Source: Octopus bimaculoides (taxonomy: Eukaryota). From it: 61,360 nt of DNA. Location of the stretch: positions 54,959,290 through 55,020,649 of the forward strand of contig NC_068991.1 in assembly GCF_001194135.2 (NCBI RefSeq), given 5' to 3'. Each line of letters begins with the position of its first letter. Within the stretch, counting starts at the first letter, position 1. This document shows, one piece after another, positions 1 to 58,069 of the stretch. Below the pieces are notes generated by a model, which ran no database searches, was not told the origin of the DNA, and worked only from the letters and a program-made list of their open reading frames with translations. The translations under genes and the position numbers were made by a program.

Positions 1-55
1 TATACATATATACATATACATATATACATACATACATATATATATACATATATAC

Positions 56-96
<41 letters not shown>

Positions 97-97
97 C

Positions 98-131
<34 letters not shown>

Positions 132-345
132 ACATATATATATATACATATATATATATACATATATATATATACATATATATATATACATATACATATA
201 TACATATATATACATATATATATATACATATATATATATACATATATATATATACATATATATACATACATATATATATACATACATATATATATACATA
301 CATACATATATATATACATATATACATACATACATATATACATCA
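1..345. repeat. Compound (TA)n/(TACA)n microsatellite
   Basis: Directly visible. Confidence 0.98.
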
Positions 346-818
346 CATGATGGTTGTAAATGAGCACCATTGTCAAACAAGCAATGCTGTTTGTTTCCTG
401 TCTAACATGAAAACATGTCCGGCCAAGGCAGAACTATTACCTTTCTTAGAAACAGGCAAGAATTGGAAACAGGAAGGGCATCCAGTCATAGAAAATCTAC
501 TTCAACATACTTTAGTCAACCCATGCAAGTATAGAAAAGAGGATGTCAAAAAAGTGGTGATGATATATGTAACCATACAAATTTCTGCATAGATGCTGTC
601 TACCATACTCTCCCTCACAAGTTATTGGTCAACTTGGGGTTATAGTAGAAGAGAAGATACTTACTCAAGGTGTATCATGCAGTGAGACTGAACCTAAAAC
701 CACATGACTGCAAAGTGAGCTCCTAAATACGCCGTCATGTCTGTAACTTTGTTTATAGTCTATGATATGAAGTTTTGATATAAGAAAAAAAAAATTGAAA
801 AATGATATTGCCACTTAC

Positions 819-1020
819 ATTGATTTTGAGAATTTTGGCAGGTAGAAGAAAGTACTTCATTATAGCAGCCTGGAATGTAATTAGAGGCTTCTGACCTCTG
901 TTGAGGAAGCATTTTCATGAAAGTTTCTATAAATGGACATCGCAACATTAATTCAAATTGTGGACTGAACTGTGAAAGACAAGCTAACAAATTGTTCACA
1001 GACATGGAACGTAACTGGAT
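819..1020 (-). CDS. Exon of the PH-like-domain gene (IQLRSMSVNNLLACLSQFSPQF...SQNQ)
   Basis: tttttctttctag|ATC...CAAT|gtaagt; 202 nt, phase 0>1; overlaps ORF 760-1005. Confidence 0.8.
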
Positions 1021-4000
1021 CTAGAAAGAAAAATAAACAAAATAGGCATGTATTTGTAGACTAGCAGAAATACCCGGCGTTGCCCGGGTTAGGGATTCAC
1101 ACAGACAGNNNNNNNNNNNNNNNNNNNNNNNNNNNNNNNNNNNNNNNNNNNNNNNNNNNNNNNNNNNNNNNNNNNNNNNNNNNNNNNNNNNNNNNNNNNN
1201 NNNNNNNNCTACTATGTGCAGGTTCACATTGCGTACAGATTTGCACAACCGATAATGTAATGTATTGAGTGCTTAATGTTTACACCATATATCTATTTTT
1301 TCTTTTATATTTTCAATCATTAGACTTCAGCCATGCTGGTGCAACACCTTGAAATTTTAGTTAAATGAATCGATCCCAGTACTTTTTTGCTGTATTTTTT
1401 ACATTGCAATTATTTTCTTTTTTTGCCAGGTAGCAATTTATTGAAGACTGGTTTTACTTTACTTGCAAACATCAGCTCTTCTGGTGACATACCTGCTGGT
1501 GACATACCTGCTGGTGTATTTGGATTCAGTGTCACACATTATACTCTTATGAATTGTTGTTGTTGTTGTTGGCACTCCGTCACTTACGACGTCGAGGGTT
1601 CCAGTTGATCCGATCAATGGAACAGCCAGCTCGTGAAATTAACATGCAAGTGGCTGAGCACTCCACAAACACGTGTACCCTTAACGTAGTTCTTGGGGAT
1701 ATTCAGCGTGACACAGTGTGACAAGGCTGGCCCTTTGAATTACAGGCACAACAGAAACAGGAAGTAAGAGTGAGAGAAAGCTGTGATGAAAGAGTACAGC
1801 AGGTTTCGCCACCGTCCCCTGCCGGAGCCTCGTGGAACTTTAGGTGTTTTCGCTCAATAAACACTCACAACGTCTGGTCTGGGAAATGAAACCGCGATCC
1901 TATGACCGCGAGTCCGCTGCCCTAACCACTGGGCCATTGTGCCTCCACCCACATATATGTACACTATTGTGAAATAAGATATTCATGGCACGAATACCTC
2001 TGATTATAGGTCAACTTGATGTGAACCAACTTAGGACTAAACAACAACAACCTTTTAATTATATACAATCAAAAACAAAAATAATTATTTCACTCACATA
2101 ATGGAAAGGTATCCGATACAATTCCCCACAAGTGAGGTCTGTTGTATGACAACGGTCATATTGAACATTTTGGACAGAACTATTTTGGTTCTTCTTACAA
2201 AAGCGGGTACCCACATACATATGAGGAGGAACTTTTACTTGGAGACGGAATTTATCTTCTTGGCCCCATATTGCCACAATGGTGTGGAAATCAACTTCAA
2301 TGATTGCTAGGTGTTTTGTATAACTGCCAGAGGAATCAGCTGTTTCTCCCACTTGGAACTCGTACACCAATTTCCTTAAACAAAACAATTGTTAAAATAA
2401 CAGAATGTCCTGAAAGTAATCTAATCAATATAAAATAAATGTTTAACCTTTTAGAATTCAGATTACTGTCAAATGCAATGCTTATTTATTCACATTATTT
2501 TGAATTAATCATGCATTACCATATTGTTTCAAGATTTCAATAATGTGATTGTTTATTTTTAGAATGAAGTGTGACACACCAGATCTGGTTAGTTTGAACA
2601 TAAAACAGGTTGAATATTTGGGCCAGATATGGCCAGTTTAAATGCTAAAGGATTAATGAAATAATCCATTAATAAAATTCAGAACAAGATTAGCAATGAA
2701 TTTAGCATGCGAATAGGTGTCCAACAAGGATCAGTTTTCAGACTCCTATTTATAAAATTTTTTCAGACTATATCAGAAGAGCTAAGGCCACTTCATTCAC
2801 AGGAACCTCTCTATACACTTGATCTGCTTTTCATTTCTGAATCTGTTGAAGAATTAGAGAAGAAATTCTAAATGTAGACGCAAAGCCTAGAATCAACAGA
2901 TTCTTACAGCAAACCAGTGGCATAGCTAGAAAGTATGTTGCCCAGAGTAGATATTGAGTTTGCTGCCCCAGCCCCACACACAATTACATGCTTCCTATAC
3001 AGGCCTATACAGAATGACTGCAGACTTCCCCACCCCAACTTCCTAGCTATGCTACTGCAGTAAACCGAGCAATAACAAAAGTTTTAGTTGACAGGAAAGA
3101 AGACAAAACTATCGCCACCTGCAAAGTGGCTCTACACACTATGCAGAAAAGGAATAGGTAGGAATTCCATGTAGTGTAGCCAATGTAAGCAATTGTTTCC
3201 AGTGGGGGGGGGGGGGAGATCAGACAAACTGATAGAGAAGAAAAACTTTGTAAGGTAGCCAGGGTACAGAAGATATTTACAAGTCAAGAAGCTTTAGTTC
3301 GTTCTCTATGATCTTCCATAAACTAAATGACTCAATTAAGAATGGCATTTTTGTAGGTTGAAATAAAAAAGTAATGCGATATATCTAACAGCACAATGCC
3401 ATGTCTGTGTGAAGACCCAATATTTTCAGTCAGTTGCAGAGTATTTTAAACATTCAAGTAATGCACTTATGACCTTTCAGTTTTATATAAATTCACCAAG
3501 CTCAGACATTATCAAGGTTAAGAAGATCTGAAATAACATTTCCCCTATAAAAATAAAATATTAAATGTACATTATCTATGTTGCCTTATATTTAGTTTAG
3601 TCTGGATGTATACAACCCTAGTTTTTTTTTACTTTAAACATAGCTGCAGTTCAGAACTTATTTACAATGTGTCACATATAAGATAAAGAGAAGCAGAAAA
3701 TAGAGAGAAAAACTGAATAAGATAACAGTGTAGGGGGTGGAGGAAAGGAGAAATGTGGATGGTTATGTAAGATGGTGAGAAAAGGAAGGTGGAAGAGAAT
3801 GAAATGGGGGGTGGGAGGAAAAAATGTAAAAGATTTCACAAGAGTAAAATATAACGAATATAAAAACTTACTTTTTACTAAAAATTACTTTCAATTTGGC
3901 TATTCTTTTGAAATTACCATCTTTGCAAAAATACTAAAGAAATATTGAATCAAAAAAGTAAAATTAATAAATTTAATAAAGTAACAAATTCAATCTACAA

Positions 4001-6341
4001 AATTCCAAAATTTTAATATTCAACTAATTAGTTCTGTAAAATTATAACAACAAAATCATTAAATCGTCAAATTAAAATGTCATTATATTTAAAGAAAAAG
4101 CATGAATATGATATGTTTTTAAAAGATGTGAATGAATTAGCAGTGGTTCTACTGATCACAATAATTCAACATAAAAATTTTTACAGTGACACCAAATAGA
4201 CAGATATTGGGATTTTAAAACCCTGAAATTAAAGTAGTAAAGTGTATGTAAATAAACGGTTTATAAGTAATGGCCAAGTCATATAAGACCTAAAAATAAG
4301 ATGGTGTTTGGTAGTGAGCATAGTGAGGAATTTAGTGAACAAGTAGGCATTCAAGAATACTAACCAGCCATCTTCTGTTTGTTCCTTTCCAAGATGAATT
4401 GAACAAGAGTTTCAGTGAAAGAGCCATCATAATTTGTGGTAATGATTTAATTCATATTGTACAATCTATAGTTGTGTGAATCTAGTACAAATAGGATAAA
4501 ATCTAAAAGCTTTGCAAAGTAACTTGATTAAAGACTAAGGAACAATTTAGTAACTTGTTTCAGTCACTGGACTACAGCCATGCCAGAGCACTACCTTGAA
4601 GGGCTTTAGCTGAACAAGTCAAGCCCCAGTACTTATGATTTTTGAAGTCTGGTACTTATTGGTCTCTTTTTTCTGAATTACTAACTTCATGGGACAATCA
4701 AGAAACCAACACTAGTTGTCAAGTAGTGGGTTGTGGTGACAAACAAACAACACACACACACACTTGTATATATATTTATATGACAGGCTTCTTTCAGTTT
4801 CTGTCTACTAAATGTACTCATAAGGCTTTAGTTGGCACAGGGCTGTGGTAGAAGACACTTGTCAAACGTGCTGTGCAGTGTGACCAAACCTGAAACTATG
4901 TGGTTACAAAGCAAACTTCTTAACTACACAGCGAAAGCTACACCTATGTCGATTAACACTAAACAATGTCAGAATTAAGAACATGCAGTCTGATAGATGA
5001 GATAATGAAGGAAATGGAAAGTGGTGTGTTGCAGACACAGCCACTTGATGCCAACATGGAGAACCATTAGAGTAGTATGTTGGTGATATGTCTTACTCCA
5101 TCGGTTACAATGACAAGGGTCTCAGCTGATCCGATCAATGGAACAGCCTGCTTTTGAAGTTAACGTGCATGGGCTGAGCACTCCACAGACATGTGTACCC
5201 TTATAACGTAGTTCTCAGGGAGATTCCACATGACACAGAGTGTGACAAGGCTGGCCTTTTGAAATACAGGTACTACTCATTTTTGCCAGCTGAGTAGACT
5301 GAAGCAACATGAAATAAAGTAATGCTGGGAATTGATCTTGTGTTTGTGAGCTGAATACTCTAACCACTAAGCCACATGCCTTCACTTGGTGATATGTAAT
5401 AAATACGATATCAAATAGATCAATTCTTGAAGTTAAATAATATCACTCTATGGATATTACTGGCTCAAATCCTAGGATGCATGAGACCAGTTACCAAGTT
5501 TTCATGGTGTATAAGTAACCAAGATCACATTCCCCACTAAATGGAATGCCAATTCATTTGCAGAGTTACTCATTTACAGCTGAGTGGATTTGAGCAATGT
5601 GAAATAAAGTGTTTTGCTCAAAAATACAATGCACCACCTGGTTGAGGAACTGAAACCACAATCTTGTGATTGTGAGTGCAACACCCGTAACTATTAGACC
5701 ACATCTTCACATATCACACTATGGGTGTCTTTATTTCACAGGAATATAAATTCTATTGGAATAAAATTTATGATTTACAATTTACCTTAAAGTTTCTGAT
5801 TTGTAAAAAGCTGAAATCAAAATGCTTTGGTCGAGGGATTTTCTTTTCACAAACATGTTTGGATTTCATAAACTTTTGATAATCTGATGTGGGTTGGTAG
5901 ATTTTTACAGAAACATCTTAAGAAAGAAATTAGAAGGAATGTAATAAATGAATTAATTTAAAACAGAGTAAAAATATAAATACATTACTCCTTTAAAAAT
6001 GCTATAATTTCTTTAGAATAAAGCATCACCAATTCTTGTTTATGCTTTCTTTTGTCATACAGCAATAGAAAAGCCTGGGACTGTCTAGGAAAACAGAATA
6101 ACCTTTCCAATTAGACTATGCTGTTACTTAACATTCAGCAAATGCATAAAATTTAAATTAATTCCAAGCACGATTTTTACTTCATCATTGTTCTAATGTC
6201 CACTTTTCCATACTTGCATGGGTCAGACAGAATTTTCTAAGATTTTCTCCATTCAGTTCTCACAGATGACTGGAAACAAATGACACCATGACACTTGCTT
6301 ACAACCATCATGCAATGACAGGACAAAGACACATGCATGTG

Positions 6342-6379
<38 letters not shown>

Positions 6380-7059
6380 GGGCTTCTTTCATTATTCATC
6401 TACCAAATCCACCCACAAGGCTTTGAGCAGCCCCAGGCCTACAATAGAAGACACATGCCCATGGTACCATGCATTAAAACTGAATCCAAAATTATGAGGT
6501 TGGGAAATGAACTACTCAATCTCACAGCCACATCTGCACCTATTTTTACTTGTATTTCATATATGGATATGTAAAAGGCACCTGGTACACTCTGTGGCAT
6601 GGTTGGTGTTAGGAAGGGCATCCAGCAGTAAAAGCCAGGCCAAAACAGACTGGAGCCTGGTGCAGCTCTCTGGCTTACCAGTTCCGGTCAAATCGCCTAA
6701 CCCATGTCAGCACGTAAAATGGACACTAAATGATGACGATACAACTAAATCACATTCAGCTTGATTGTTATGATTTACTTTAACCTTTGCATGTGCACAG
6801 ATATGACTTTACGTGCCATGCAACCATTGTCATAAGACTTTATAAAATACAAAACAGATCAAGAAATGAAACGATAGTGAGACATCAGCACGTCACTGGA
6901 TTTAAGTAACAAAAGCTTATACAACATGTTTACTACTCACTTGGTCACCATAGTAGGGACCAGTGACAAGCAGTGCAAGATGAGTGCTAGTATTATGACT
7001 GCAAGTTTTATGTCGGAGAATCTTTCTTTAGAAGACCTGTATGTATGTGTGTGTGTGTG

Positions 7060-7135
<76 letters not shown>

Positions 7136-7154
7136 CACGCACACACACGCACAC

Positions 7155-7185
<31 letters not shown>

Positions 7186-8431
7186 GTGTCTATACTTACT
7201 TGAAAGAGAACCAAAATCTTCAAAATTCTGCATAGGAAACAGTCTCTCAGGGTTATCCTTGGGATTTGAAAATTCATAATCAAATGGTGATGTCTCTGGG
7301 AGTGTTGGGTCTACTGAATTTATTCCTGAAGATAACACATTTCTGTTGTTCATTTCATCGAAATTTTTAGAATTTATTTTGAATAAATTTTCTTCACAAA
7401 ATTCTGACTGATTATTTATAATAAATGGAACTGGAAATGATTCTTGAGCATTCGATTGGTTGCAATTTGAAGCTGATTTCAAACCAGTCATCATTCTTCC
7501 ATCAGAAAAGGCTTCTTTATTTACTGTATTTTCTTGAATTGTCTCACAAGTTTCTAATAACTCTCGAACTGTCCAACTTCGTAAATCTTTCTCACTACAA
7601 AGAAATTTGGCATTTCGTGCTTTGATTGAAACTGGAACCCTTTCAGGAATTTTTTCCAGAGTGTTTTTCTTATAGATATTTCTTGCTGAATATGGCAAGT
7701 ATCTGCTGGGCTTAAAAACCACTCCATCATGAAAAGATCTACTCAGATTCTCAGAAGAATTGGTAAGACTAACTGTATGCATTAAAGGAGGTATAGTAAG
7801 AACACCTTTAGAATTAATGGCTGCAGGAGTTTTATTTGATGGTAATGGTACCATTTTATCATAAAGACATTTATGAAGACATTTATTCAAATTCTGATAT
7901 TGAACATTTCCAGAATGTAAGCTTTCTTTGCCGATAATGTCACTTTTTTCATTAGTCCTTTTATTTGATGTATTAAACAAAGACACATCATTAAAATAGT
8001 TCACATTAATATCTAATGAGCCAATATTATCATCATTTACTGGATTAGAACCATAACAACCATTTACATTTAGAGAACTTTCGGCATTATATGAACTTGA
8101 TGATGGTATATCTACATCAGATTTCATAGAGAATAATTTTGGTGAACAAGAAGACACATTCTTTGATGGCAGATCTTCAAAATTCAAATGACATCCTTCT
8201 GCTTGACAATCAGACTTAGAATAATTTACCTCCACCTCACAATCTTCTGCAGGACACAAGCCTAACATTTGTTGAACAGGAGAAAAGTTGTAATGCTCAA
8301 TATTAGGAACATTATGCATTTCTGCTGTTGGGTACCTTAACTCTAAGGTAGATGACAGCCATTCAGTGATGTTTTCCATAGAAGTTATATGAATTATCCA
8401 AGTAATTGTGTATTTTGTACTCTGGGTAAAC
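819..8431 (-). CDS. Multi-exon uncharacterised gene, 3'-incomplete at the window edge: long Asn/Ser-rich N-terminus plus putative TRF2/HOY1-type PH-like domain
   Basis: Exons 7200-8431 (ends phase 1), 5786-5916 (1>0), 3872-3933 (0>2), 2098-2374 (2>0) and 819-1020 (0>1) all have AG/GT boundaries and chain without a stop codon. The start is uncertain: ATG at 8379, or a tentative 8-nt coding first exon at 12815-12822. Confidence 0.85.
1060..1108 (+). mobile_element. Possible non-autonomous Helitron/Helentron 5' end, running into a gap
   Basis: ACTAGCAGAAATACCCGGCGTTGCCCGGG start followed by ACAGACAG resembles recalled invertebrate Helentron-type starts. Confidence 0.4.
1554..1948 (-). mobile_element. 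tRNA-derived SINE (octopus OR-type) with (CAA)n tail
   Basis: Minus strand begins GTGGAGGCACAATGGCCCAGTGGTTAGGGCAGCGGACTCGCGG (A-box, tRNA-like head). A degenerate second copy lies at about 5090-5390. Confidence 0.8.
2098..2374 (-). CDS. Exon of the PH-like-domain gene (KLVYEFQVGE...ELYRIPFHY)
   Basis: ttttgtttaag|G...TAT|gtgagt; 277 nt, phase 2>0; overlaps ORF 2059-2388. Confidence 0.85.
2690..3190 (+). mobile_element. Degenerate RTE-LINE RT fragment interrupted by a hAT MITE
   Basis: Matches the GV.QGS...LL / ELEKKF...LES region of the RTE copy at 37-38 kb; resumes after 3065. Confidence 0.65.
2915..3057. mobile_element. hAT-like MITE (143 bp)
   Basis: TIRs CAGTGGCATAGCTAG / CTAGCTATGCTACTG; 8-bp TSD CAGCAAAC / CAGTAAAC. 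Confidence 0.75.
3872..3933 (-). CDS. Exon of the PH-like-domain gene (YFCKDGNFKRIAKLKVIFSK)
   Basis: atttctttag|TAT...AAAA|gtaagt; 62 nt, phase 0>2. Confidence 0.8.
5786..5916 (-). CDS. Exon of the PH-like-domain gene (VSVKIYQPTSDYQKFMKSKHVCEKKIPRPKHFDFSFLQIRNFK)
   Basis: tttcttaag|AT...AAG|gtaaat; 131 nt, phase 1>0, matches both neighbouring exons. Confidence 0.8.
7020..7186. repeat. (GT)n followed by a long (AC)n/(ACACACACGC) microsatellite
   Basis: Directly visible; intronic, beside the 7199 donor. Confidence 0.95.
7200..8431 (-). CDS. Large exon of the PH-like-domain gene (low-complexity N-terminal region)
   Basis: Open frame MENITEWLSS...EDFGSLS. Donor TCAA|GTAAGT at 7199; acceptor gctatag|G at 8432. 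An alternative in-frame acceptor would start the exon at 8421. Confidence 0.8.
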
Positions 8432-10899
8432 CTATAGCAAATAACATTTTACAAAAAAATTCTATTGAACACTCCAATTTATGAGTACAATAATGATAAT
8501 TATATTATTCAGAAAATGATAATTTCTTGTAAATAATTAGTTCAAACTCAATTTATTCAGAATTTTCAAGATTAACATCTGCTTGTGATACTGATTGTTT
8601 ATATCAAGTATATAAGCATTCCAAGCAAACAACAACCAGAATTATATCATTTAATACAGCTGCATGTACATATATAGCTATTATCACATTTACATTTTTT
8701 TTACACATATACACATGTACACACAGTTTACATATAGATATACCCACATGCATATACACACATACATCATTATATACTTACACAAATTATAATGGGGTCT
8801 CTTGTAAGCTGTAGATTTGGAGAAGAAATTTCAGACAAAAGCAAAACCTGAAATTAAAATGTCTTAAAGTAAACTTAGCAAAGATTAAGGTTTTAATAAG
8901 TAGAAAAGAAGAGAGGATCCTGCAACTTTTGGGGAATTGGTAGTGTATGATATATAGAAAAGAAGTGAGTAGAAATTCCAAACTGTGTGTTCAAGTGTCC
9001 AAGGTAAATTTTGAATACACAAAAGATATGGTGGGATTTCAGGTCGGTTAACAAAGGGGGTTGACTTCACATCTTCACATGCAGCAGATGAGGCAAACAC
9101 TAAAAAAAAAGAAAAAAACATAGAGAAAAGAAATACTCTGAAGTACCAGGATGGCTCCCTGAAAGCAGTTAATATCTTTTGTTACCTAAGTGAGCTAATG
9201 AATAGTGATGGTAGGTGTTTTGAGAGCTGGAATGAGAGGATTGGACACTGATGATTTGGAATGGCTGACTGGATACTGAGCTTGTTTTGGTGGCAGCAAT
9301 TTTTGGTACAGGACGCAAACACAAACACACATGTGTGTATTGAAATACACATAGAAAGAGTGAGAGAGCCAAATCAATCTATCAATTGAACACAATTGAC
9401 AAGCACATTCCCTCTCCTCAGACACATAAAGGGAATTATTCTCACAGACATAAACAGAGAGGAGAGGGATAGAGGATAAGAGATGTATTAAATCATTAAA
9501 ATGTCTGATGTCAAGTCAGCGACTGCAAATATGCAGCACTAAAACAGCTGTGCCAAAATGTCACATATCCTCTGAAAATGGAGTAACTAAAGAAGGGATT
9601 GGGTGGAAAATGTTCAGGGAACTATTACATCTGGCAATAAAGGGCTTATCCCACAGATTGATTAATGTTTGTGTGTAAAATACAATGTTGTAGGGCAAAT
9701 AGATGTGAACTTTTAAGGTAGAAGACTTGTAAAAACTAGAAGGAAATAATGTTAGTGTGATTGAACAATGAAGAACAAATAAACTGAACAAAACACTTGG
9801 TAAAAGAGGAAATTTAATGTGGTATGCAGGAGCAGACACTGCACTGCATATGAAGGATGGCAGCTATATAAGGATGTACTAAATGCTCAAAGTGAATGGA
9901 GCCTGTGGAAATGGAATGAAATGGTAAAGATCAATTTCAAGTTGTTGCATCTCACAAAGGGGATGATTAGGGCCCATGTTGATTGGTGACGCCTATGTTG
10001 AAAACCTGATAAACAATAAAAGCAGGGTGAAACATACATTAAAAGGAAGGTGGAGTAGTGATGGATGTTGGGATATCTCATCAACATCTGGGCCTTTCAC
10101 CCATTTGTAGCTGCTAAGTCACCATTTGCTGCCTCTCTTGCCATATTCAATATCTTCTCATCTCTCATTACTCCCATAGTTACTTCTACTCCACCACCTG
10201 TGGAATCAAAGAAAACATCAAATTTTTATACTCATCCCTATCTCTCAACCACAATTCATATCTCACTACTCCACTTCATTTCTGAATTATAATGCTAGGG
10301 TAAGGAAAGATTGCAGTAGATCGTGTATTCAATACACACCTTTCTCCTATCCCTATAAACTGTAGACACTCCCTTTCCCTCAAGTTACTCCTTCACTAAC
10401 ATCCATCACTCACTCAACAGCTAATATTACCTTTCTCCATAGTAAATTTCTTCCCCCTGTTTACTCTTTATTGACATACATCAATCTCTCTTTCTCCATC
10501 AAATCTGTAGCCCACCTCAGTGTCTCTTTCCCATCACATCTGAGTAACACAGGTTTACATCAGATACGAAATAATTCATTATATCCCACTCTCATTCTCT
10601 CTCTCTCTCTCCAACCAACAAACACATAGCTGCTATTAATATCATCCCACTCCCCTTCCCTCAGACTACCCCTTCAATGACATCACTCACTCTCCCAACT
10701 TTACTCTTCTATACTGTTAACCAGCACTTCTCATCAAGTCACCTATTATTGACATCTATCAAACTTTTACCATTGACCATTTCTACAACTATCATTGCTC
10801 TCTCTCTCTCTCTCTCTCATTACCCTGCAATTACTGTTGCTCATTACACCCTATGAAAACTGTCTCTGCTGTTACTGTCCCACTTCAGCACTTCTAGTA

Positions 10900-11340
10900 C
10901 TACCCCTACTAGTATCCTTCGGCGTAGTCAACCTTTACTCAAACATCCCCCACACAATAGGAATAGAAGCAATCACTTTCTGGCTAAACAACTACTCCTT
11001 TGAACTTCCAACTCGCATAAATAAAGAACTAGTAATAGGAAGACTAAGATTTATCTTACAAAACAATTACTTTATATTTAATAATGACTACTACAGACAA
11101 AGATCGGGAACAGCCATGGGTACATGTACTGCACCTTCTTTTGCTAACCTAGTAATGGGCTACCTCGAAATAATACTTTACCAGAAAACACTTGAAAAAT
11201 ATGGAAACTCTTTCTCCACCTATATCCAGAACAACTGGAAAAGATATCTCGACGACTGCTTCATCCTCTGGGATAAAAGCATAGAAAAACTTGAGGAATT
11301 TAAAATACTACTAAATGGAATTAATGAAAACATCCACAAT
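10900..11340 (+). mobile_element. Penelope-like element reverse-transcriptase fragment
   Basis: LVSFGVVNLYSNIPH, YYRQRSGTAMGTCTAPSFANLVMG and WKRYLDDCFILW are PLE RT motifs; flanks are non-coding (CT-rich). Confidence 0.85.
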
Positions 11341-14300
11341 CACCTGATCACTCTCTCCCTTACTACACTCTTGCTGCTTTCTCTTTCCTTTTTCCCATCC
11401 TCATACATTTTCTGCAGTTATCTTCTGCCCTGCCCTTTCAATTAATCATGTTGCCCTGAATAGAGATAAAAAACAGTGGTGCATACCATGCAACATCACT
11501 AGTGTTGGTGCCACGATTAACACTCTATAAAGTGGTTGGTGCCTGAACAGAGGCAGCATAGGGTTGAGTGGAGCATTTACTCCTGTTTAGTCAAAAAAAA
11601 AAAAAAAAAGAGGACAACTTCTCAATTATTTATGCCATGGGACTCTGCATTTGGTACACTGTAAAATGGTTGTTGGTAGGAAAGCATCCAACCATAGGAA
11701 TTGTGCCAACATAAAACATATGAATGAGACACAGTCCCCTGGGCCTTGTCTTGACTTAGCTGCCCTACACATGCCATTATGGAAAGTAGAAGCAAAATAA
11801 ACATACATATGCATGTGCACATAGACACACATCTTGTGACTCTGGAATTAGCAGGCAGAAATTGTATGAAAACTTGTTGTGTGTGTGTGTGTGTGTGTGC
11901 ATGCACATGTGCATACGTGTATAGATATATATATACTTGTGTGTAAAATTTTTGGATTTTTTTGCTTCACATTGAGCAAAAGATGGGGATGTTTACTGAC
12001 TTGCTAGCCCTGCACTTTTGAAGACGTATTAAATAAAAAGTCCCTTGCTTAAAAACCAGCTAAGGATTAGCAACAGGAAAGGTGTCCAGATGTGAAGAAA
12101 AATATGTATCAATTGATATGTATTTTTCCAACCTATGCTTGTCTTGGAAAAAAAAACAAAAAAAAAAAAAACAAAGGAATAAAACAGACATTAAACAAAT
12201 GAACAATGTGTGTATTATGGTAATAACCTATGCTTGAAATATAGTTTCTATTGCTAGTGAAAACCAAAACTATTATCAAAGTAGTATTTTTGATAATATA
12301 CTTTATGAACAGGTGCTCAGTGATGTAAGGAGAGTGTGTGTCACTTTTTGGTTTGTCCTCCACCCCAACCCTATACAGCAAACCCAAAATGTTGCCCCTA
12401 TATAAGTGTCACCTGGGGAGGGCTGCCACTCAACCTATGCTACTGAAGGTACCTTACATCTCTATATTATTCATAACTTTATACATGGCAATGTATAAGA
12501 CAACGGCGTTTATGTTTACCTAATTTACATAAAATTTGCTGTTATTTATAAATTCCAATGTAGTTATACATATTCTTAAACCATTATAGGTTATTTTTGT
12601 TTGATTGTCATTTTTCAATTTCTTCAATTTTTGTTCCAATTGATTTCATATTTAGTGTATTGGTGTAGTTTTGTATGGTAGTCATTTACATGAAATACAT
12701 TTTCGTCATAAATCGAAAAAGAGTTAGTAGCTTTTAGTCAATCAAAAGCCGCAGGCATATAGAATACCTGTTTTCATTGTAACAAGCCAAGCTGTTACCA
12801 AGCTGCTTACTCACGTAGTCATTTTTCGCTTATTAAATGCTTAAAATTCATGAGGTGAGCTAAAAATAATAGCTAATAGGCCTTAAATTACGCACCAATT
12901 TATTATTGGGGGGGGGGGGGATGCATCGTATGAATTTTCATGTGTAGAATACAAATTCGCAAAAGTTTTCTGAAAATACCCAAAAATAAAAGAAAGTTTT
13001 GAGGGTTATATAGCGTGCGTAACGCAGAATTCCGTCAATATTTCATTTGTTTACAGTTAACAACACGTACAATCACACAACATGACAACTTCCAAATCCT
13101 ATTTTCCGACAATAAAAATTATCAAACCGTTTTTAACAATTTTCATAGAAAAATTTAAACAGCTTGTACACGTTTTTATTAAAGCTTTGCTATACTTGGA
13201 TAATTTATATCTAATTTACTGATATTAATGATTAATAGGCGGAGGTAAAGAAAACGTACACCACCCATTTTCGGCCTAACAAAAATCCTAACCCTAACCC
13301 CCGTGTGCGTATTCTTTACTTTCGCCTAAATAATTAAGATTATTTACAATTTCAAGAAATTAATTTCTTTCGTAAACGAAGCCCCTCAGATTTTATGGAC
13401 AAGAGTTATTGGGAAGTTGTGATATTCATAAATATTCGATAAGATACAGCCTAGAATTGAAACTAGGCCGCACATTTTCCCACTGCTATGCTGGGCCAAA
13501 AAAAGAATTTCTCAAAATAAAAGCAATGCTGTATTATTTTGCCCCTTCTACTATTTTGAGCCTAAACATTCTTAAAAGCATTAAAACAAAGATTACATTA
13601 TGTTCATTTATTAAACTAAAATATTGTTCATTGCATTTTTGGTAACGTGTCTTTCGTTTAAAATATAATTATAAAACACAAGATAAATTAGATTATTCTT
13701 AAGTAGTTAGTTCTATAATACGTCGGATTATTAATATTATTGGCCATTTAGGAAATTATAACAGGACGGAATTTATACATTTTTGATGTTACTAAAACTT
13801 TTGATATTAACTAGCAAGAAACATGGCTTGCAACCATTTAGCTTTTAAAAGGAATAAATATTTACATACCGTTAAATCACGCTTACTGTCATATTCAAAT
13901 AAGAAGTAAAACCTGTTGAGTTTTGTTTTTACCTTGGTAAACACAAAATTTTAGAATATCAATGAATAATTGTAATTTTACCAAAGTTTTCTTGTTGGTA
14001 GATATCCTAGAATTCTATGAATATGAATATGTGAAGACTGTTCGCATATATCTCATATTTCAATTAATTAGTCGGTGAAACTTTCTTTTTATTTAATATA
14101 TCCACACCAAGAAGGTACAATACTGAAAGTTAACTAAAGTATCTGAGTTCAAAACTCAGTAGAGTTAAAATAGATATATTTTTTTATTTGTGATTCATAA
14201 TAAAATACCATTCTTCAATGTTTCGGTGTTTCCATGCTTTTTATTTTTTTTTAAATTGTAGAACTAATGGAATTGGTTTACTTTGTAGACTTTCAAAACG

Positions 14301-36000: not shown

Positions 36001-39000
36001 CTGCTACTAGTGAATTTAGAGCTCCATGTAGAGCAGTGGTTGTGAACCATTTTTTACCTATGGAACCTCTTTGATTCCTGTTTTACACGGCTGAATCTTC
36101 CAACCTATTCAATGCTTAAAAATTCCTACTACATTTTGAAAATTAAATATTATTAGGAATTGTATTAAAAATTGTTAAAGTATTTTGTGTATTGTAAAAG
36201 TTTAACCAATTTATTGCAGATAAATTTTAGCTTCAGCCAGGGTTCTAACAGGCAAGGCACATAGGTTTAAAATCTTTTGGCAAGGTAACACAGATGGAGT
36301 AGGAAGGGGGTAGGCATACACCTTGTGGAGAAATGGGTGGATAAGGTCATAGAGACTGTCAGGGTATGCGATAGAGTGCTTAAGCTCAGGCTAGTGTTGC
36401 AGAACAGTATAGCAACAATTATCTCTGCCTACGCCCCACAAGTGGGCCTACCAAATGATCAGAAGGACAATTTTTATGATACTCTTCTACAGGCTACCTC
36501 AAAGACAAGTGGCAATAACCTCATCTTTGCGGCTGGAGATTTTAATGGGCATGTTGGACGACAATCTGGTATCTTCGCTGGTGTACACAGGGGCCATGGT
36601 ATTAGTTCCTGAAAAAATGAGGGAACTAGGCCACTGGAGTTCTGTCATGCATGTAACCTTTTAATCTGCAACACTAACTTCAAGAAGCCAGACAGCCACC
36701 TGATAACCTATCAATCAGGTGACTCCGCTAGCCAGATTGATTTCACCCTCACCAGACAGCGGGACACAGGGTTGCTCTTAAATACAAAGATTCTCCCAGG
36801 TGAGGAATGTATGTCCCAGCATAGACTAGTCATCAGTGACTTTTGACTCAAGGCCAGAAGGATGCCAAGAAGCAAACCAATCCAGAAAAGGATTTGGAAG
36901 CTAAAGAACCCTTCACATGATCAGAGATTTAGGGACATCCTCATCAAGAAATTTGATGAAAGGGAGGAGGAGCTACAGACCTCGGACATAGAAGGTAGCT
37001 AGAAATTCCTACGGAACTGCTTACTGAGTGCCACAGACCAAGTCTGTGGATGGTGCAATGTCCCTTCCAGACCTAGAGTAACGTGATGGTGGAATAATAC
37101 GGTAGACAAAGCCATTAGAACAAAGAAACAGGCTTGGAAATCCTGGAAGGGTGGGGATAGCAGGGAACTGTACCAGATAGCCAAAAGGGAAGCTGGGCGA
37201 CAGGTATACATAACCAAGGGTGAAGCAGAAGAGAAGAAGTTTGCCAATGTCCAGCGACGTGAGGACCAAAGAACTGAATTATTTCGGATTGCAAGACAGT
37301 GTGTGAGAGAAAATTGTTATGTCACAGGAGAGAAAGGTGTTCACATGGATGATGGTGCACTTGCTTTTGACGATTCGGAAAAGAAAGAGGCTTGGAGAAG
37401 CCATTATGAAAGACTGCTGAACGTGGAGAATGAATGGGAGGGGGAGAGTCTGCCAAATGTTGATCCAGTAGAAGGACCAGCTATCCAAATAGACAGCAGC
37501 CTGGTAGATAAAGCAATTAAGGGTATGAAGCCAGGAAAAGCCCCCGGCCCATCAGGAAACACTGCTAAGATGCTTAAAACATCTGGTAGTGTGGGCTATG
37601 GCCTAGTCACCCGTATTGTAAACCAGGTAGTTCATGATGGAGTCAAATCCAATAACTGGCGTAGCAGCACCATAGTCAACTGCTACAAGGGTAAAGATGA
37701 TTCTTTAGATAGAAATAACTACAGGGATATCAAACTGCTGGATCATGTGATGAAGGTCATGGAGAGGGTCATAGCCCAACTAATTAGGGAGAGAGTCTGC
37801 TTAGATGAGATGCAATTCGGTTGTGTACCAGGTAGAAGCACCACTGATGCTATATTCCTGGTACGGCAACTACAGGAGAATTACATAGCCAAAGATAATC
37901 CCCTATATCTGGCTTTTGTGGACTTGAAGAAAGCCTCTGATAGGGTCACCCGACCCCTTATCTGGTGGGTGATGCGGAAACTGGGGATTGACGAATGGCT
38001 AATAAGGGCTGTACAGGCCCTATATAAAAATGCCATTAGTAAGGTTAGGGTTGACAATGAATATAGTGAAGAATTCCGGGTAGAAGTAGGAGTCCACCAA
38101 AGATCAGCCATCAGCCCCGGCTTATTCATCATAGTCCTCCAGGCAATAACAGAGGAATTCAAGACAGGTTGCCCCTGGGAGCTCCTCTATTCTGATGACC
38201 TGGCTCTCATAGCAGAATCACTACCAGAACTAGAGAAGAAATTCCAGGTGTGGAAGCAAGGTTTAGAGTCGAAGGGCCTTAGAGTCAATGTCGCAAAGAC
38301 CAAAGTTCTAGTAAGTAGGAAGGTGAACACATACACACCCCTTCAGGTAGGTGGCCCTGCTCAATCTATAGAAAAAGTGTAGGTAGAAACTTCATAAGAT
38401 GTACCCAGTGTAAGCTATGGACGCATAAGAGGTGCAGCAACATCAAAGGAAGATTAACCAGGAAGATAGCTTTCGTGTGCAGCAGATGCACTGGGGCAAT
38501 AAACACCACAGATGCTCAGAAAATAGATTCCATCACATGCCAGGGGAAGAAACTAGAAGTAGTTGATAGTTTCCACTACCTAGGGGACCAAGTCAGTAGT
38601 GAGGGTGGATGCTCGGAGGGCGTTACCACTAGAATAAGAATTGCCTGAGCAAAGTTCAGACAACTTCTACCCCTACTGGTGACAAAGGGCCTCTCACTCA
38701 GAGTGAAAGGTAGATTGTATGATACATGTGTACGAACTGCCATTCATCATGGCAGTGAAACATGGGCCGTGACTGCTGAAGACATGTGTAGGCTCAAAAG
38801 AAATGAAGCTAGCATTATCGGTTGGATGAGCAATGTCAGTGTGCACACATGACAGAATGTAAGCACCCTGAGAGAAATGTTGGACAAAAGAAACATTGGA
38901 TGTGGCCTGCAAGAGAGACATTTGTATTGGTATGGTCATGTACTATACAGATGGATGAGGAGAGATGTGTGAAGAAGTGCCACTCCTAAACAGTGGAAAG

Positions 39001-51140: not shown

Positions 51141-51999
51141 TTAATATTGGATAGGACGGTCTTTGGCAGTAATTATAGCTTGAATTCTACAAGGTATGGA
51201 CTCATACAAAGTTTGAATTGCTTCCGAAGTAATTTTTGTCCATTCTTCAGCTAAAACAGTCTCCAGTTCTTGTAGTGATGATGCTGGAAGATATCGACTC
51301 CTTACTTGTTCTTCTAAAATGCACCATAAATGTTCAGTAATGTTGAGATCTGGGGACTGTGGTGGCCAGATAAGATGTTCAACTTCACTAGAATGCTCTT
51401 CGTGCCATTCAGTAACAACTTTAGCTGTGTGAATTGGTGCATTATCATCCTGAAAGATTGCATTTCCCTCCGGAAACAGTTCCGCAACCATAGGATGAAT
51501 TTGATCAGATAAAATGCTTAAATAGTCTTGACTATTAATTCTGCCATGAAGGGAAACCATAGGGCCGGCGGATTTTCAAGATATAGTCCCCCAGATCATC
51601 ACAGATCCCCCTCTATGTTTAACAGTTGAAAGAAGGCAGTCTGGGTCAAATGCTTCTTTTGGCTGTCTCCACACTTATACTCGGCCGGTGGTTGGAAATA
51701 AAGTCAATGATGACTCGTCCGAGAAAATAAAATTCTTCCACTGCTCTAGGGACCAATTCTAAACGCTTTGCAGCTCCACTCCAAACGCTTTGCAACGTTT
51801 GTTTTTGAAAGTAGTGGTTTTCTGATTGTAGCCCTCCCGTGAAATCTGGCTTTGTGCAGCTCCCGGCGAACAGTTTTTGTGGAAACTGGGTTCTCAAGGT
51901 GGTCATTAAGTTCTGCAGTAATTTTGGGAGCTGTACTTTTGTGATCTTTTCCAACAATTCGCGTAAGTCCCAATCTGAAAGTTTTGGTTTTCTTCCGGA
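51141..51999 (-). mobile_element. Tc1-like transposase pseudogene fragment, continuing into a gap
   Basis: FQDDNAPIHTA, WPPQSPDLNITEHLW and RKPLLSKTN; frameshifted. Confidence 0.92.
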
Positions 52000-56583: not shown

Positions 56584-58069
56584 CATGGAGGGGTTGAACA
56601 AAATAACGGAAACACCTGGCATCATAGTATCATAATTTTGAAATATCNNNNNNNNNNNNNNNNNNNNNNNNNNNNNNNNNNNNNNNNNNNNNNNNNNNNN
56701 NNNNNNNNNNNNNNNNNNNNNNNNNNNNNNNNNNNNNNNNNNNNNNNNNNNNNNNNNNNNNNNNNNNNNNNNNNNNNNNNNNNNNNNNNNNNNNNNNNNN
56801 NNNNNNNNNNNNNNNNNNNNNNNNNNNNNNNNNNNNNNNNNNNNNNNNNNNNNNNNNNNNNNNNNNNNNNNNNNNNNNNNNNNNNNNNNNNNNNNNNNNN
56901 NNNNNNNNNNTAGTGTTGCTCAATATGTTTTCCTAAAATTGCTGTTTCTTTTTAGATATCATAAAAAAAAGGTAATAAAAATTCATTAAAATGACAGATC
57001 TATCGGACTTTCAAAGAGGTCAAATTGTTGGTGCTCATGTGGCAGGCGCTAGCGTAACGAAAATATCCAAAATGTTTGGTGCATCTTGAAGTACTCTCTC
57101 GAAAGTAATGACAGCCTTTGAGAAAGAGGGAAAAACCTCCTCGTCGAAACAAAATTCCGGAAGAAAACCAAAACTTTCAGATAGAGAGTGTCAGACTCGT
57201 ACGCGAATTATTAGACAGGATCACAAAAGTACAGCTCCCAAAATGACTGCAGAACTTAATGACCACCTTGAGAACCCAGTTTCCACAAAAACTGTTCACC
57301 GGTAGCTGCACAAAGCCAGATTTCACGAGAGGGCTACAATCAGAAAACCACTACTTTCAAAAACAAACGTTGCAAAGCATTTACAGTGGAGTAAAAACCT
57401 ACAGAATTGGTCCCTTGAGCGGTGGAAGAATATTATTTTCTCGGACGAGTCATCCTTTACCTTATTTCCGACCACCGGCTGAGTATACGTGTGGAAACAG
57501 CCAAAAGAAGCATTTGACCCAGACTGCCTTCTTTCAACTGTTAAACATGGAGGAGGATCTGTGGGGCAGGGCTATATCTTGAAAATCCGCCAGCCCAATG
57601 GTTTCCTTTCATGGCAGAATTAATAGTTAAGACTACTTAAGCATTTTATCTGACCAAATTCATCCTATGGTTGCGGAACTGTTTCCGGAGGGAAAGGTAA
57701 TCATTCAGGATAATAATGCACCAATTCACACAGCTAAAGTTGTTACTGAAAGGCACGAGGAACATTCTAGTGAAGTTGAACATCTAATCTGGCCACCACA
57801 TTCCCCAGATCTCAATATTCTTGAACATTTATGGTGCGTTTTAGTCAAACAAGTAAGGAGTCGATATCCTCCACCATCATCACTACAAGAATTGGAGACT
57901 GTTTTAGCTGAAGAATGGACAAAAATTCCTTTGGAAACAATTCAAACTTTGTATGAGTCCATACCTCGTAGAATTCAAGCTGTAATTACTGCCAAAGGCA
58001 GTCCTACAGCATATTAAAATAGATTTGTTTGAAATTTTAAGATGTTTCCATTATTTTGTCCAACCCCTG
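56584..58069 (+). mobile_element. Tc1-like (DD34E) transposon, near full length, inactive
   Basis: TIRs ..GGGTTGAACAAAATAACGGAAACA / TGTTTCCATTATTTTGTCCAACCCCTG|TA; MTDLSDFQRGQIVG, FSDESSF, QDNNAPIH and WPPHSPDLNILE; in-frame stops and a frameshift. Confidence 0.95.

What the first reader, a model, noticed from the sequence alone, without database searches (positions are those of the whole stretch)
819..5916. Animal gene carrying a fungal/plant-type TRF2/HOY1 PH-like domain, invisible in the ORF track
Seen: four small exons splice in phase into ...KHFDFSFLQIRNFK|YFCKDGNFKRIAKLKVIFSKK|KLVYEF...LAIIEVDFHTIVAI...KFRLQVKVPPHMY...TTDLTCGELYRIPFHY|IQLRSMSVNNLLACLSQFSPQF. Recalled knowledge: the plant/fungal TRF2/HOY1 PH-like domain runs NFPAS.LKIG.W...AKCYFAK.KLVWEV...KIEIQWSDI.AL...L.l.R.P.FF...DFT.GQA...H.LQ...L.Q.D.RL. 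The blocks match in order. Inference: this is a metazoan member of a family I know only from fungal homeobox/telomere-related proteins (Yarrowia HOY1, Ustilago Trf2) and uncharacterised plant proteins. Here it follows a ~400-aa Asn/Ser-rich region with no recognisable homeodomain. Its function and distribution in animals may be undescribed.
Basis: partly seen in the sequence, partly recalled or inferred. Interest (0 to 1): 0.78.

Follow-up and report, generated by a model that had tools for sequence, protein, structure and literature searches.

The report
Octopus gene with TRF2/HOY1 PH-like domain
The gene belongs to an uncharacterised protein family found from corals to amphioxus, so it is a solid but modest find.

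Summary
On the minus strand a coding exon (8379-7200) and four small exons (5916-5786, 3933-3872, 2374-2098, 1020-819) splice in phase with canonical GT/AG sites. Octopus vulgaris, O. sinensis and Argonauta gene models read straight through every junction. All three junctions inside the domain sit at the same position and phase as introns in amphioxus. The N gap (1109-1208) is intronic and hides no exon. One 35-aa terminal exon lies off the window.

The window protein alone scores below Pfam's cut-off for PF24818 (18 bits against 24). However, 14 of 27 relatives hit that model and nothing else recurs. Two relatives, and the family consensus (27.4 bits), pass the cut-off. AlphaFold2 gives a confident PH-like fold (pLDDT 92).

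The family spans cnidarians, molluscs, annelids, brachiopods, chelicerates, hemichordates and amphioxus, and every named member is called uncharacterised or named only for its CXC domain. Most members carry a C-terminal LIN54/MSL2-like CXC zinc module, which cephalopods lack.

Function is inferred, not shown: a partner-binding module of a nuclear regulator. It is a new member of a known kind, of moderate interest.

The parts
7200..8379 (-). First coding exon. It runs from ATG (MENITEWL...) to the donor (...FEDFGSLS + 1 nt | gtaagt) and encodes 393 aa that are Ser/Asn-rich with no Pfam domain.
   Evidence: The same start is used in Argonauta. The ORF is open from the same ATG in O. sinensis. 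The listed ORF 6937-8379 reads on past the donor into a (CA)n microsatellite.
7534..7638 (-). Conserved short motif VPVSIKARNAKFLCSEKDLRSWTVRELLETCETIQ (protein residues 248-282).
   Evidence: Nearly invariant in cephalopods and recognisable in the bivalve Potamilus. Weaker 'KTVRELL'-type matches lie upstream of the PH-like domain in gastropods and chelicerates (E-values marginal).
5786..5916 (-). Exon A (131 nt): linker plus the first strands of the PH-like domain (...PRPKHFDFSFLQIRNFK).
   Evidence: The 3' junction is shared with amphioxus (...VIQVGTWK|).
3872..3933 (-). Exon B (62 nt): YFCKDGNFKRIAKLKVIFSK plus a split Lys codon.
   Evidence: The split-codon junction before KLVYEF has the same position and phase in amphioxus.
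2098..2374 (-). Exon C (277 nt): core of the PH-like domain (KLVYEF...IPFHY).
1109..1208 (.). Assembly gap inside the C/D intron. It is not coding.
   Evidence: All orthologous proteins are continuous across the C/D junction.
819..1020 (-). Exon D (202 nt): last strand and C-terminal helices of the PH-like domain (IQLRSMSVNNLLACLSQFSPQFELML...) plus a tail. It ends with 1 nt of a Tyr codon that is completed in a last exon outside the window.
   Evidence: pLDDT 96-98 across the C/D junction; O. bimaculoides A0A0L8HW83 continues with YVEFSEHMSEC...FDDV; in O. sinensis the last exon lies about 1.75 kb downstream.

Best explanation
This is the Octopus bimaculoides orthologue of an uncharacterised metazoan gene. 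It has five coding exons in the window and one short terminal exon beyond it, giving about 652 aa.

The protein has three parts. The first is a 393-aa Ser/Asn-rich N-terminal region with no recognisable domain (not tested for disorder). It carries one short conserved motif (VSIKARNAKFLC...TVRELLE). The last is a roughly 155-residue PH-like domain (about residues 424-577) of the TRF2/HOY1 type (Pfam PF24818).

Shown here:
- the gene model;
- the family assignment at profile level;
- the confident PH-like predicted fold;
- the wide distribution in animals;
- the ancestral pairing with a C-terminal LIN54/MSL2-like CXC zinc module, which cephalopods lack.

Inferred, not shown: the PH-like domain acts as a protein or peptide docking module of a nuclear, chromatin-associated regulator. 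In most animals the protein would be tethered to DNA by its CXC module, as the fungal members are by a homeodomain or Myb domain. In cephalopods the DNA-binding part has been lost, so the protein would work as an adaptor through partners bound by the PH-like domain and the N-terminal motif.
For: Gene model:
- Canonical splice sites and matching phases.
- Orthologue proteins cross every junction.
- O. sinensis locus is colinear with identical splice sites.
- Three intron positions are shared with amphioxus.
- dN/dS against O. sinensis is 0.27 for the PH part and 0.58 for the N-terminal part, on small counts.

Domain:
- PF24818 hits.
- AF2 model with pLDDT 92.3 and pTM 0.87.
- Foldseek neighbours are RDR2 (prob 1.00) and PTB/EVH1 domains.

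Architecture of relatives:
- A Cys-rich module follows the PH-like domain in most non-cephalopod members.
- Its first part matches the LIN54 CXC domain (E 7e-5) and the MSL2 CXC domain (E 0.033). Pfam MSL2-CXC and TCR give weak hits.

Function by analogy:
- Fungal HOY1/Pho2/Grf10-type homeodomain proteins share a conserved 'interaction region'. In S. cerevisiae Pho2, point mutations there inhibit interaction with its three coregulators (PMC6200990, which cites Bhoite et al. for this).
- An AF2 model of that region from real Pho2-family proteins is also a PH-like sandwich with a C-terminal helix.
- Its best PDB neighbours are the same as for the octopus domain: RDR2 entries with prob 0.84-0.99, then PTB/PH domains.
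Against: - The window protein by itself is below Pfam's curated cut-off (18.2 against 24 bits).
- No bona fide plant, HOY1 or UmTrf2 sequence could be fetched, so no direct profile-profile test against them was possible.
- Budding-yeast Pho2 proteins do not hit PF24818 even at E <= 1.
- hhalign of the animal profile against the Pho2 interaction region gives only a 59-column alignment in the right register, with E 0.02 and probability 2.4%. The functional analogy to Pho2 therefore rests on fold and a shared PDB neighbour, not on significant sequence similarity.
- All Foldseek E-values are weak (>= 0.012).
- Nuclear localisation, partners and DNA binding are untested.
- No expression data for O. 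bimaculoides were available.
Confidence: 0.6

Rival explanations
1. The domain is a PH-like fold with no specific kinship to the TRF2/HOY1 family. On this reading the Pfam matches reflect generic beta-sandwich sequence patterns.
For: The window sequence and many relatives score below the curated cut-off. hhalign to the yeast Pho2 region is not significant. Foldseek E-values are weak.
Against: PF24818 is the only model hit by more than one of 27 relatives: 14 hit it, best E 2e-7, and every other model has a single member. In the seven hits whose coordinates were listed, six cover nearly the whole profile in one register and one (P0002) covers positions 4-87. Two members and the family consensus exceed the cut-off.
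Confidence: 0.08
2. The family assignment is right, but the domain binds a phosphoinositide, a nucleic acid or another small ligand through its conserved basic strand (K-x-K-x-x-F-S-K-R/K), rather than a protein partner.
For: The basic 'KLKVIFSKRK' segment is among the best conserved stretches of the animal alignment. A similar 'LISKKNFEINYFF' is conserved in the Pho2 family. Classical PH domains use basic residues of the first strands to bind lipids (established knowledge). The closest solved neighbour sits inside an RNA polymerase.
Against: No test of this was made here. The partner domains in relatives (CXC, homeodomain, Myb) point to the nucleus. The Pho2 region is described genetically as a protein-interaction region (PMC6200990).
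Confidence: 0.2
3. The domain is a relic or relative of the PH-like domain associated with cellular RNA-dependent RNA polymerases (PF25358/PF25359), rather than of the TRF2/HOY1 type.
For: The top PDB neighbour is Arabidopsis RDR2. One member each, and the consensus, hit PH_fung_RdRP or PH_met_RdRP weakly (E 0.04-0.06).
Against: These hits are four orders of magnitude weaker than those to PF24818 and lie below their cut-offs. No RdRP catalytic domain was found in any family member scanned. The RDR2 match more likely shows that the two PH-like families are related to each other.
Confidence: 0.05
4. The locus is a decaying pseudogene or a transposon-derived ORF, not a functional host gene.
For: The locus is surrounded by SINE, reverse-transcriptase and transposase fragments. 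The public O. bimaculoides protein for this locus found here (A0A0L8HW83) holds only a 97-aa fragment.
Against: All exons in the window (the last exon lies outside it) are intact. The splice sites are identical in O. sinensis. dN/dS is below 1. Orthologues exist across cephalopods, and intron positions are conserved to amphioxus.
Confidence: 0.03

Closest known systems
Pfam PF24818, TRF2/HOY1 PH-like domain (named after Ustilago maydis Trf2 and Yarrowia lipolytica HOY1)
   Same: Colinear match over nearly the whole 119-position profile. The animal family consensus and two members pass the curated cut-off. The predicted fold is PH-like.
   Different: The octopus sequence alone is sub-threshold. 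The protein has no homeodomain or Myb domain. In other animals the partner domain is a CXC zinc module, and in cephalopods there is none.
'Interaction region' of fungal homeodomain factors Pho2/Grf10/HOY1/Phx1 (PMC6200990)
   Same: The block order is the same by eye (VGSW..., ISKKNFEINYFF, ILFRIFFP, L.L.KPPKF, DFSEG.QV, PH.L.GL..SL.F). The AF2 fold is a sandwich with a C-terminal helix. The best PDB neighbour is the same, RDR2.
   Different: No significant sequence link was obtained here (hhalign E 0.02, probability 2.4%; no PF24818 hit in Saccharomycete Pho2). Yeast proteins carry a helical insert and Asn/Asp-rich loops.
Internal PH-like domain of plant RNA-dependent RNA polymerase RDR2 (PDB 7eu1, 7roz, 7rqs, 7w84); Pfam PH_fung_RdRP and PH_met_RdRP
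   Same: It is the closest solved structure (Foldseek prob 1.00, TM 0.44 over 180 columns, 18% identity). Weak sequence hits also occur.
   Different: There is no polymerase domain. Sequence hits are below threshold. The match shows kinship of fold, not of function.
LIN54/tesmin and MSL2 CXC DNA-binding domains
   Same: The C-terminal module of most non-cephalopod family members has the nine-Cys CXC pattern and matches LIN54 (E 7e-5) and MSL2.
   Different: It is absent from the octopus gene, from the window, and from all cephalopod orthologues seen. The second half of the module (PCC...YSWC...PRNHC..C..C...HC..C..CYF) matches nothing known.

Membership tests
Pfam PF24818 PH_TRF2_HOY1 | The protein's own score against the profile reaches the curated cut-off (24 bits) | tested here: inconclusive
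   17.6-18.2 bits, E 0.0024-0.0037. It is the only hit and covers profile positions 2-115 of 119. Significant as an E-value but below the curated cut-off.
Pfam PF24818 PH_TRF2_HOY1 | Clear homologues of the protein, and the profile consensus of its family, reach the cut-off in the same register | tested here: met
   Amphioxus P0005 scores 24.1 bits and Mactra P0006 24.3 bits. These are homologous to the window at E 5.6e-26 and 1.9e-23. The consensus of A1 scores 27.4 bits, E 3.3e-6, positions 2-116 of 119. 14 of 27 members hit, best E 2e-7.
Pfam PF24818 PH_TRF2_HOY1 | PH-like fold (beta-sandwich closed by a C-terminal helix) | tested here: met
   AF2 model with pLDDT 92.3 and pTM 0.87: strands followed by helix 146-156. 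PTB and EVH1 domains and the RDR2 domain are among the top Foldseek matches. This is a prediction, not a solved structure.
Pfam PF24818 PH_TRF2_HOY1 | Direct profile-profile or structural match to bona fide fungal (HOY1, UmTrf2) and plant members | not testable with these tools
   No such sequences could be retrieved. The word-indexed searches timed out or returned only close relatives, and no AlphaFold DB library was available.
Pfam PF24818 PH_TRF2_HOY1 | Typical context (not defining): a sequence-specific DNA-binding domain in the same protein | tested here: not met
   No Pfam domain was found in the N-terminal exon. No CXC module is present in the window or in cephalopod orthologues. The context is met in most other animal members through their CXC module.
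Uncharacterised metazoan 'PH-like + CXC' family (Potamilus KAK3611469, Branchiostoma XP_035665134, Lingula XP_013392320 and others) | Significant similarity of the PH-like domain, with shared intron positions | tested here: met
   35 clusters with E <= 1e-3 and 12 with E <= 1e-10. Three introns have the same position and phase in octopus and amphioxus.
Uncharacterised metazoan 'PH-like + CXC' family | C-terminal Cys-rich module of about 160 aa after the PH-like domain | tested here: not met
   The octopus, Argonauta and decapodiform proteins end 35 aa or less after the alignable region, without the module. tblastn of the module against the window finds nothing. This reads as a lineage-specific loss.
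Classical phosphoinositide-binding PH domains | Lipid-binding basic motif in strands 1-2 and membrane targeting | not tested
   Only a conserved basic strand was noted. No Pfam PH, PTB or EVH1 model was hit.
RdRP-associated PH-like domains (PF25358, PF25359) | Score above the cut-off and an adjacent RdRP catalytic domain | tested here: not met
   E 0.043-0.057 and 13.9 bits against a cut-off of 27. No RdRP domain was found in any family member scanned.

The most novel reading that the evidence does not exclude
The TRF2/HOY1 PH-like domain may be an ancient eukaryotic partner-recruiting module that is repeatedly attached to different DNA-binding domains: a homeodomain in Pho2/HOY1, Myb in basidiomycete Trf2, and CXC in animals. 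It would also be related to the PH-like domain of cellular RdRPs. On this reading the animal branch is an undescribed CXC transcription or chromatin factor that persists from cnidarians to amphioxus. It was not seen in vertebrates, insects or nematodes in the one search made. Cephalopods would have converted it into a DNA-binding-free adaptor.
Probability: 0.3. Interest if true: 0.5.

Novelty: new member of a known kind. Interest (0 to 1): 0.35.

Why it matters
This result gives a correct full gene model for a locus whose public O. bimaculoides protein found here is a 97-aa fragment.

It shows that a domain family named after fungal proteins has a widespread, unstudied animal branch with its own architecture (PH-like plus CXC).

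It offers a first functional handle. The Pho2-type 'interaction region', the only experimentally probed candidate relative, is predicted to have the same fold. Its genetics point to partner binding.

It also records a lineage-specific loss of the DNA-binding module in cephalopods.

None of this overturns current knowledge. The value lies in annotation and in domain evolution.

Tried and rejected
- Two single-sequence searches of the word-indexed protein database timed out. The profile search with A1 returned only one fragment. The family was instead recovered with the exhaustive HMMER search.
- The first literature search was swamped by 'Ph-like leukaemia' papers.
- The 'HOY1' hits in a Sin3 preprint were yeast strain names HOY13 and HOY14.
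- The UmTrf2 paper does not discuss the domain, and its in-vitro assays used an N-terminally truncated protein.
- The Grf10 paper's supplements hold no sequences.
- To reach fungal members I used a Pho2 sequence recalled from memory, purely as bait. It hit only Homeodomain in Pfam. It retrieved real Pho2-family proteins, and all later tests used those database sequences. They neither hit PF24818 nor align significantly to the animal profile, and HOY1 itself was not reached.
- No PDB entry is a sequence homologue.
- Rfam found nothing in window 1-10000.
- The pseudogene, transposon, RdRP-relic and chance-hit readings were considered and judged unlikely, as set out under the rival explanations.
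Full report
**1. What is in the sequence**

Read on the minus strand, the region holds five coding exons.

| Exon | Coordinates | Content |
|---|---|---|
| First | 8379-7200 | ATG to '...FEDFGSLS' plus 1 nt, then gtaagt |
| A | 5916-5786 | linker and first strands of the domain |
| B | 3933-3872 | YFCKDGNFKRIAKLKVIFSK plus split Lys codon |
| C | 2374-2098 | core of the domain |
| D | 1020-819 | last strand, C-terminal helices, tail |

- Every acceptor is AG and every donor is GT.
- The phases fit at each junction: 1+2 nt, phase 0, a split Lys codon AA|G, and phase 0.
- The spliced product is 617 codons plus 1 nt, with no stop.
- The listed ORF 6937-8379 is 480 aa only because it reads past the donor into a (CA)n microsatellite.
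- The first exon encodes 393 aa with 12.7% Ser and 11.7% Asn and has no Pfam hit.

**2. The gap**

- The run of N at 1109-1208 lies in the C/D intron, 88 nt upstream of the exon D acceptor.
- Exon C ends in phase 0 and exon D starts in phase 0.
- Aligned window sequence on either side of the gap (window 1209, and window 1060, which lies 48 nt below the gap) maps to positions 18298 and 18304 of the O. sinensis locus, 5 bp apart.
- Every orthologous protein reads '...PFHY|IQLRS...' without interruption.
- The AlphaFold model places the last beta-strand right across this junction with pLDDT 96-98.

No exon is hidden in the gap.

**3. Independent support for the gene model**

An exhaustive HMMER search of 1.84 billion representative proteins found 35 relatives. 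The closest are these.

| Protein | Species or source | Identity to the 223-aa tail |
|---|---|---|
| CAI9729932 | Octopus vulgaris | 95%, one matched stretch covering query 1-223 |
| XP_036362901 | O. sinensis | same 90% cluster as the above |
| GAB1609691 | Argonauta hians | 76%; starts MENFIEWL, as at window ATG 8379 |
| Transcript-derived proteins | probably decapodiform cephalopods (unnamed Logan assemblies; my inference) | 58% |

- The cluster of the O. vulgaris protein also holds O. bimaculoides A0A0L8HW83 (97 aa). It is identical to exon D from its Met and continues with 'YVEFSEHMSECSQNMDSSKSSCKMCSTMVKSFDDV'.
- The window is therefore from O. bimaculoides or a near-identical genome.
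- That last exon is not in the window. In O. sinensis it lies about 1.75 kb downstream of exon D, which in the window would fall before position 1.
- The O. sinensis locus is colinear, with identical exon lengths and splice dinucleotides.
- Its reading frame is open from the same ATG, so the RefSeq model that starts at an internal Met is probably short.
- dN/dS between the two octopuses is 0.27 over the PH part and 0.58 over the N-terminal part. Counts are small: 7 synonymous and 8 non-synonymous changes in the PH part.
- In the amphioxus homologue, introns lie after '...VIQVGTWK', in the codon before 'KLVYEF', and after '...VPYHK'. These match the octopus junctions 5786/3933, 3872/2374 and 2098/1020 in position and phase. 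Amphioxus has one extra intron.

Conservation of intron positions across the protostome-deuterostome split is strong evidence that the junctions are real and the gene is old.

**4. What the domain is**

- The spliced tail hits one Pfam model only, PF24818 'TRF2/HOY1 PH-like domain'. The score is 17.6-18.2 bits (E 0.0024-0.0037), below the curated 24 bits, but it covers profile positions 2-115 of 119.
- Scanning 27 aligned relatives one by one, 14 hit PF24818 (best E 2e-7). Every other model is hit by one member at most.
- The amphioxus and Mactra members reach 24.1 and 24.3 bits.
- The HMM consensus of the animal alignment scores 27.4 bits, E 3.3e-6, positions 2-116.
- AlphaFold2 on that alignment gives pLDDT 92.3 and pTM 0.87, a stack of strands closed by a C-terminal helix.
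- No PDB chain is a sequence homologue.
- By structure, the best match among 350,542 chains is the internal domain of Arabidopsis RDR2 (7eu1_M: prob 1.00, E 0.012, 180 columns, 18% identity). It is followed by FRS2/SNT PTB and Homer EVH1 domains.
- Weak hits to the Pfam 'RdRP-associated PH-like' models (E 0.04-0.06) agree with this.

My reading is that the domain is a member of the TRF2/HOY1 PH-like family, which is itself related to the RdRP-associated PH-like domains. Membership is shown at family level and by transitivity. The octopus sequence alone is sub-threshold. I could not fetch bona fide HOY1, UmTrf2 or plant sequences for a direct profile-profile test.

**5. The animal family**

- Named members come from the following groups:
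  - corals: Porites, Oculina;
  - bivalves: Potamilus, Mactra, Mya;
  - gastropods: Babylonia, Nucella, Batillaria;
  - an annelid (Owenia) and a brachiopod (Lingula);
  - chelicerates: horseshoe crab, sea spider, tick, mite, spiders;
  - a hemichordate (Saccoglossus) and amphioxus.
- All are labelled uncharacterised, hypothetical, or 'CXC domain-containing'.
- No vertebrate, insect or nematode appeared among the named hits. This was one phmmer pass, so the absence is not proven.
- Most non-cephalopod members continue, after the PH-like domain, into a Cys-rich module of about 160 aa.
- The first part of that module has nine invariant Cys followed by NPLN, and matches the LIN54 CXC domain (E 7e-5) and MSL2 CXC (E 0.033). 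There are weak Pfam MSL2-CXC and TCR hits.
- The second part (PCC...YSWC...PRNHC..C..C...HC..C..CYF) matches nothing known.
- Cephalopod proteins stop without this module, and tblastn finds no trace of it in the window.
- A second short motif in the N-terminal region (VSIKARNAKFLC...TVRELLE, window 7638-7534) is nearly invariant in cephalopods and present in Potamilus. It is echoed as 'KTVRELL' upstream of the PH-like domain in gastropods and chelicerates, with marginal statistics.

**6. How it may work**

Nothing here measures function. Three points are established:
- the fold belongs to a superfold mostly used for docking peptides, proteins or phospholipids;
- wherever a partner domain is present it is a DNA-binding type: CXC in animals (shown here), homeodomain or Myb in the name-giving fungal proteins (by the Pfam name and the literature);
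- fungal HOY1/Pho2/Grf10-type homeodomain factors share a conserved 'interaction region', and in Pho2 point mutations there inhibit interaction with its three coregulators (PMC6200990).

I tested whether that region is the same domain.
- Real Pho2-family proteins were retrieved with a recalled Pho2 sequence used only as bait.
- They do not hit PF24818.
- They align to the animal profile only partially: 59 columns in the right register, E 0.02, probability 2.4%.
- Their AlphaFold model (pLDDT 78.9, pTM 0.78) is again a strand sandwich closed by a C-terminal helix.
- Its best PDB neighbours are again RDR2 structures (7roz, 7rqs, 7eu0, 7w84, 7eu1; prob 0.84-0.99), followed by PTB and PH domains.

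Two independent models converging on the same unusual neighbour supports kinship but does not prove it.

On this basis I commit to the following. The protein is a nuclear regulator whose PH-like domain recruits partner proteins. It was ancestrally tethered to DNA by CXC, and in cephalopods it is reduced to an adaptor. I put about 0.85 on identity and family, and about 0.4 on the mechanism. The main rival is ligand binding (lipid or nucleic acid) through the conserved basic strand 'K.K..FSKRK'.

**7. Novelty and verdict**

- The gene is already predicted as 'uncharacterized' in O. sinensis and O. vulgaris.
- Pfam's own cut-off is passed by some animal members, so automatic annotation probably already lists animals.
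- No paper in the held library mentions PF24818 or IPR057939. The UmTrf2 in-vitro assays used an N-terminally truncated protein.

The finding is right. It improves an annotation and points to an unstudied, widespread animal family. It remains a new member of a known domain family, not a new kind of system. Interest is 0.35.

Noticed in passing
window 7040-7190 (minus strand, just after the exon 1 donor): A long (CA/GT)n microsatellite starts a few bases after the donor. It keeps the frame open, so the mechanical ORF (6937-8379, 480 aa) overstates the exon by about 87 codons.
   Followed up: yes
window 1580-1950 and 5105-5276: Two copies of a repeat I judge SINE-like by eye lie in two different introns of the gene, in the same orientation (82.7% identical over 173 bp). 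No tRNA or Rfam match was found in window 1-10000 at gathering thresholds.
   Followed up: partly
window 10795-11445 (+), 37303-38382 (+), 51141-51560 (-), 57667-58017 (+): Transposon debris: reverse-transcriptase ORFs (RVT_1, E 6e-4 and 1e-22) and two DDE_3 transposase fragments (E 7e-13 and 4e-12). This fits the GC-richer block at 36-40 kb.
   Followed up: partly
window 819-1020 plus the off-window exon; L001 9473-10652: Public gene models are incomplete. O. bimaculoides A0A0L8HW83 covers only exon D from an internal Met plus the last exon (97 aa). O. sinensis XP_036362901 starts at an internal Met although the ORF is open from the conserved MENITEWL start.
   Followed up: yes
relatives P0005, P0006, P0007, P0010, P0011, P0023 and others (alignment A2): The second half of the C-terminal Cys-rich module (PCC...CP.C...YSWC...PRNHC..C..C.D.R..HC..C..CYF), with invariant and near-invariant Cys and His, has no Pfam or PDB match. 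It may be an undescribed zinc-binding module.
   Followed up: partly
fungal proteins P0052-P0065 (alignments A3, A4): The Pho2-family 'interaction region' is predicted to be a PH-like sandwich with an inserted helical pair. It shares RDR2 as its best PDB neighbour with the octopus domain. Yet Pfam PF24818 does not detect these Saccharomycete proteins.
   Followed up: partly
window 1021-2097 versus L001 15828-18343: The C/D intron is 1077 bp in the window (including 100 N) but 2516 bp in O. sinensis. The difference lies in repeat-rich sequence between window 1957 and 1388.
   Followed up: no
window 1-340: The window starts in a long (TA/TG)n microsatellite, and alignment to O. sinensis stops there.
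   Followed up: no
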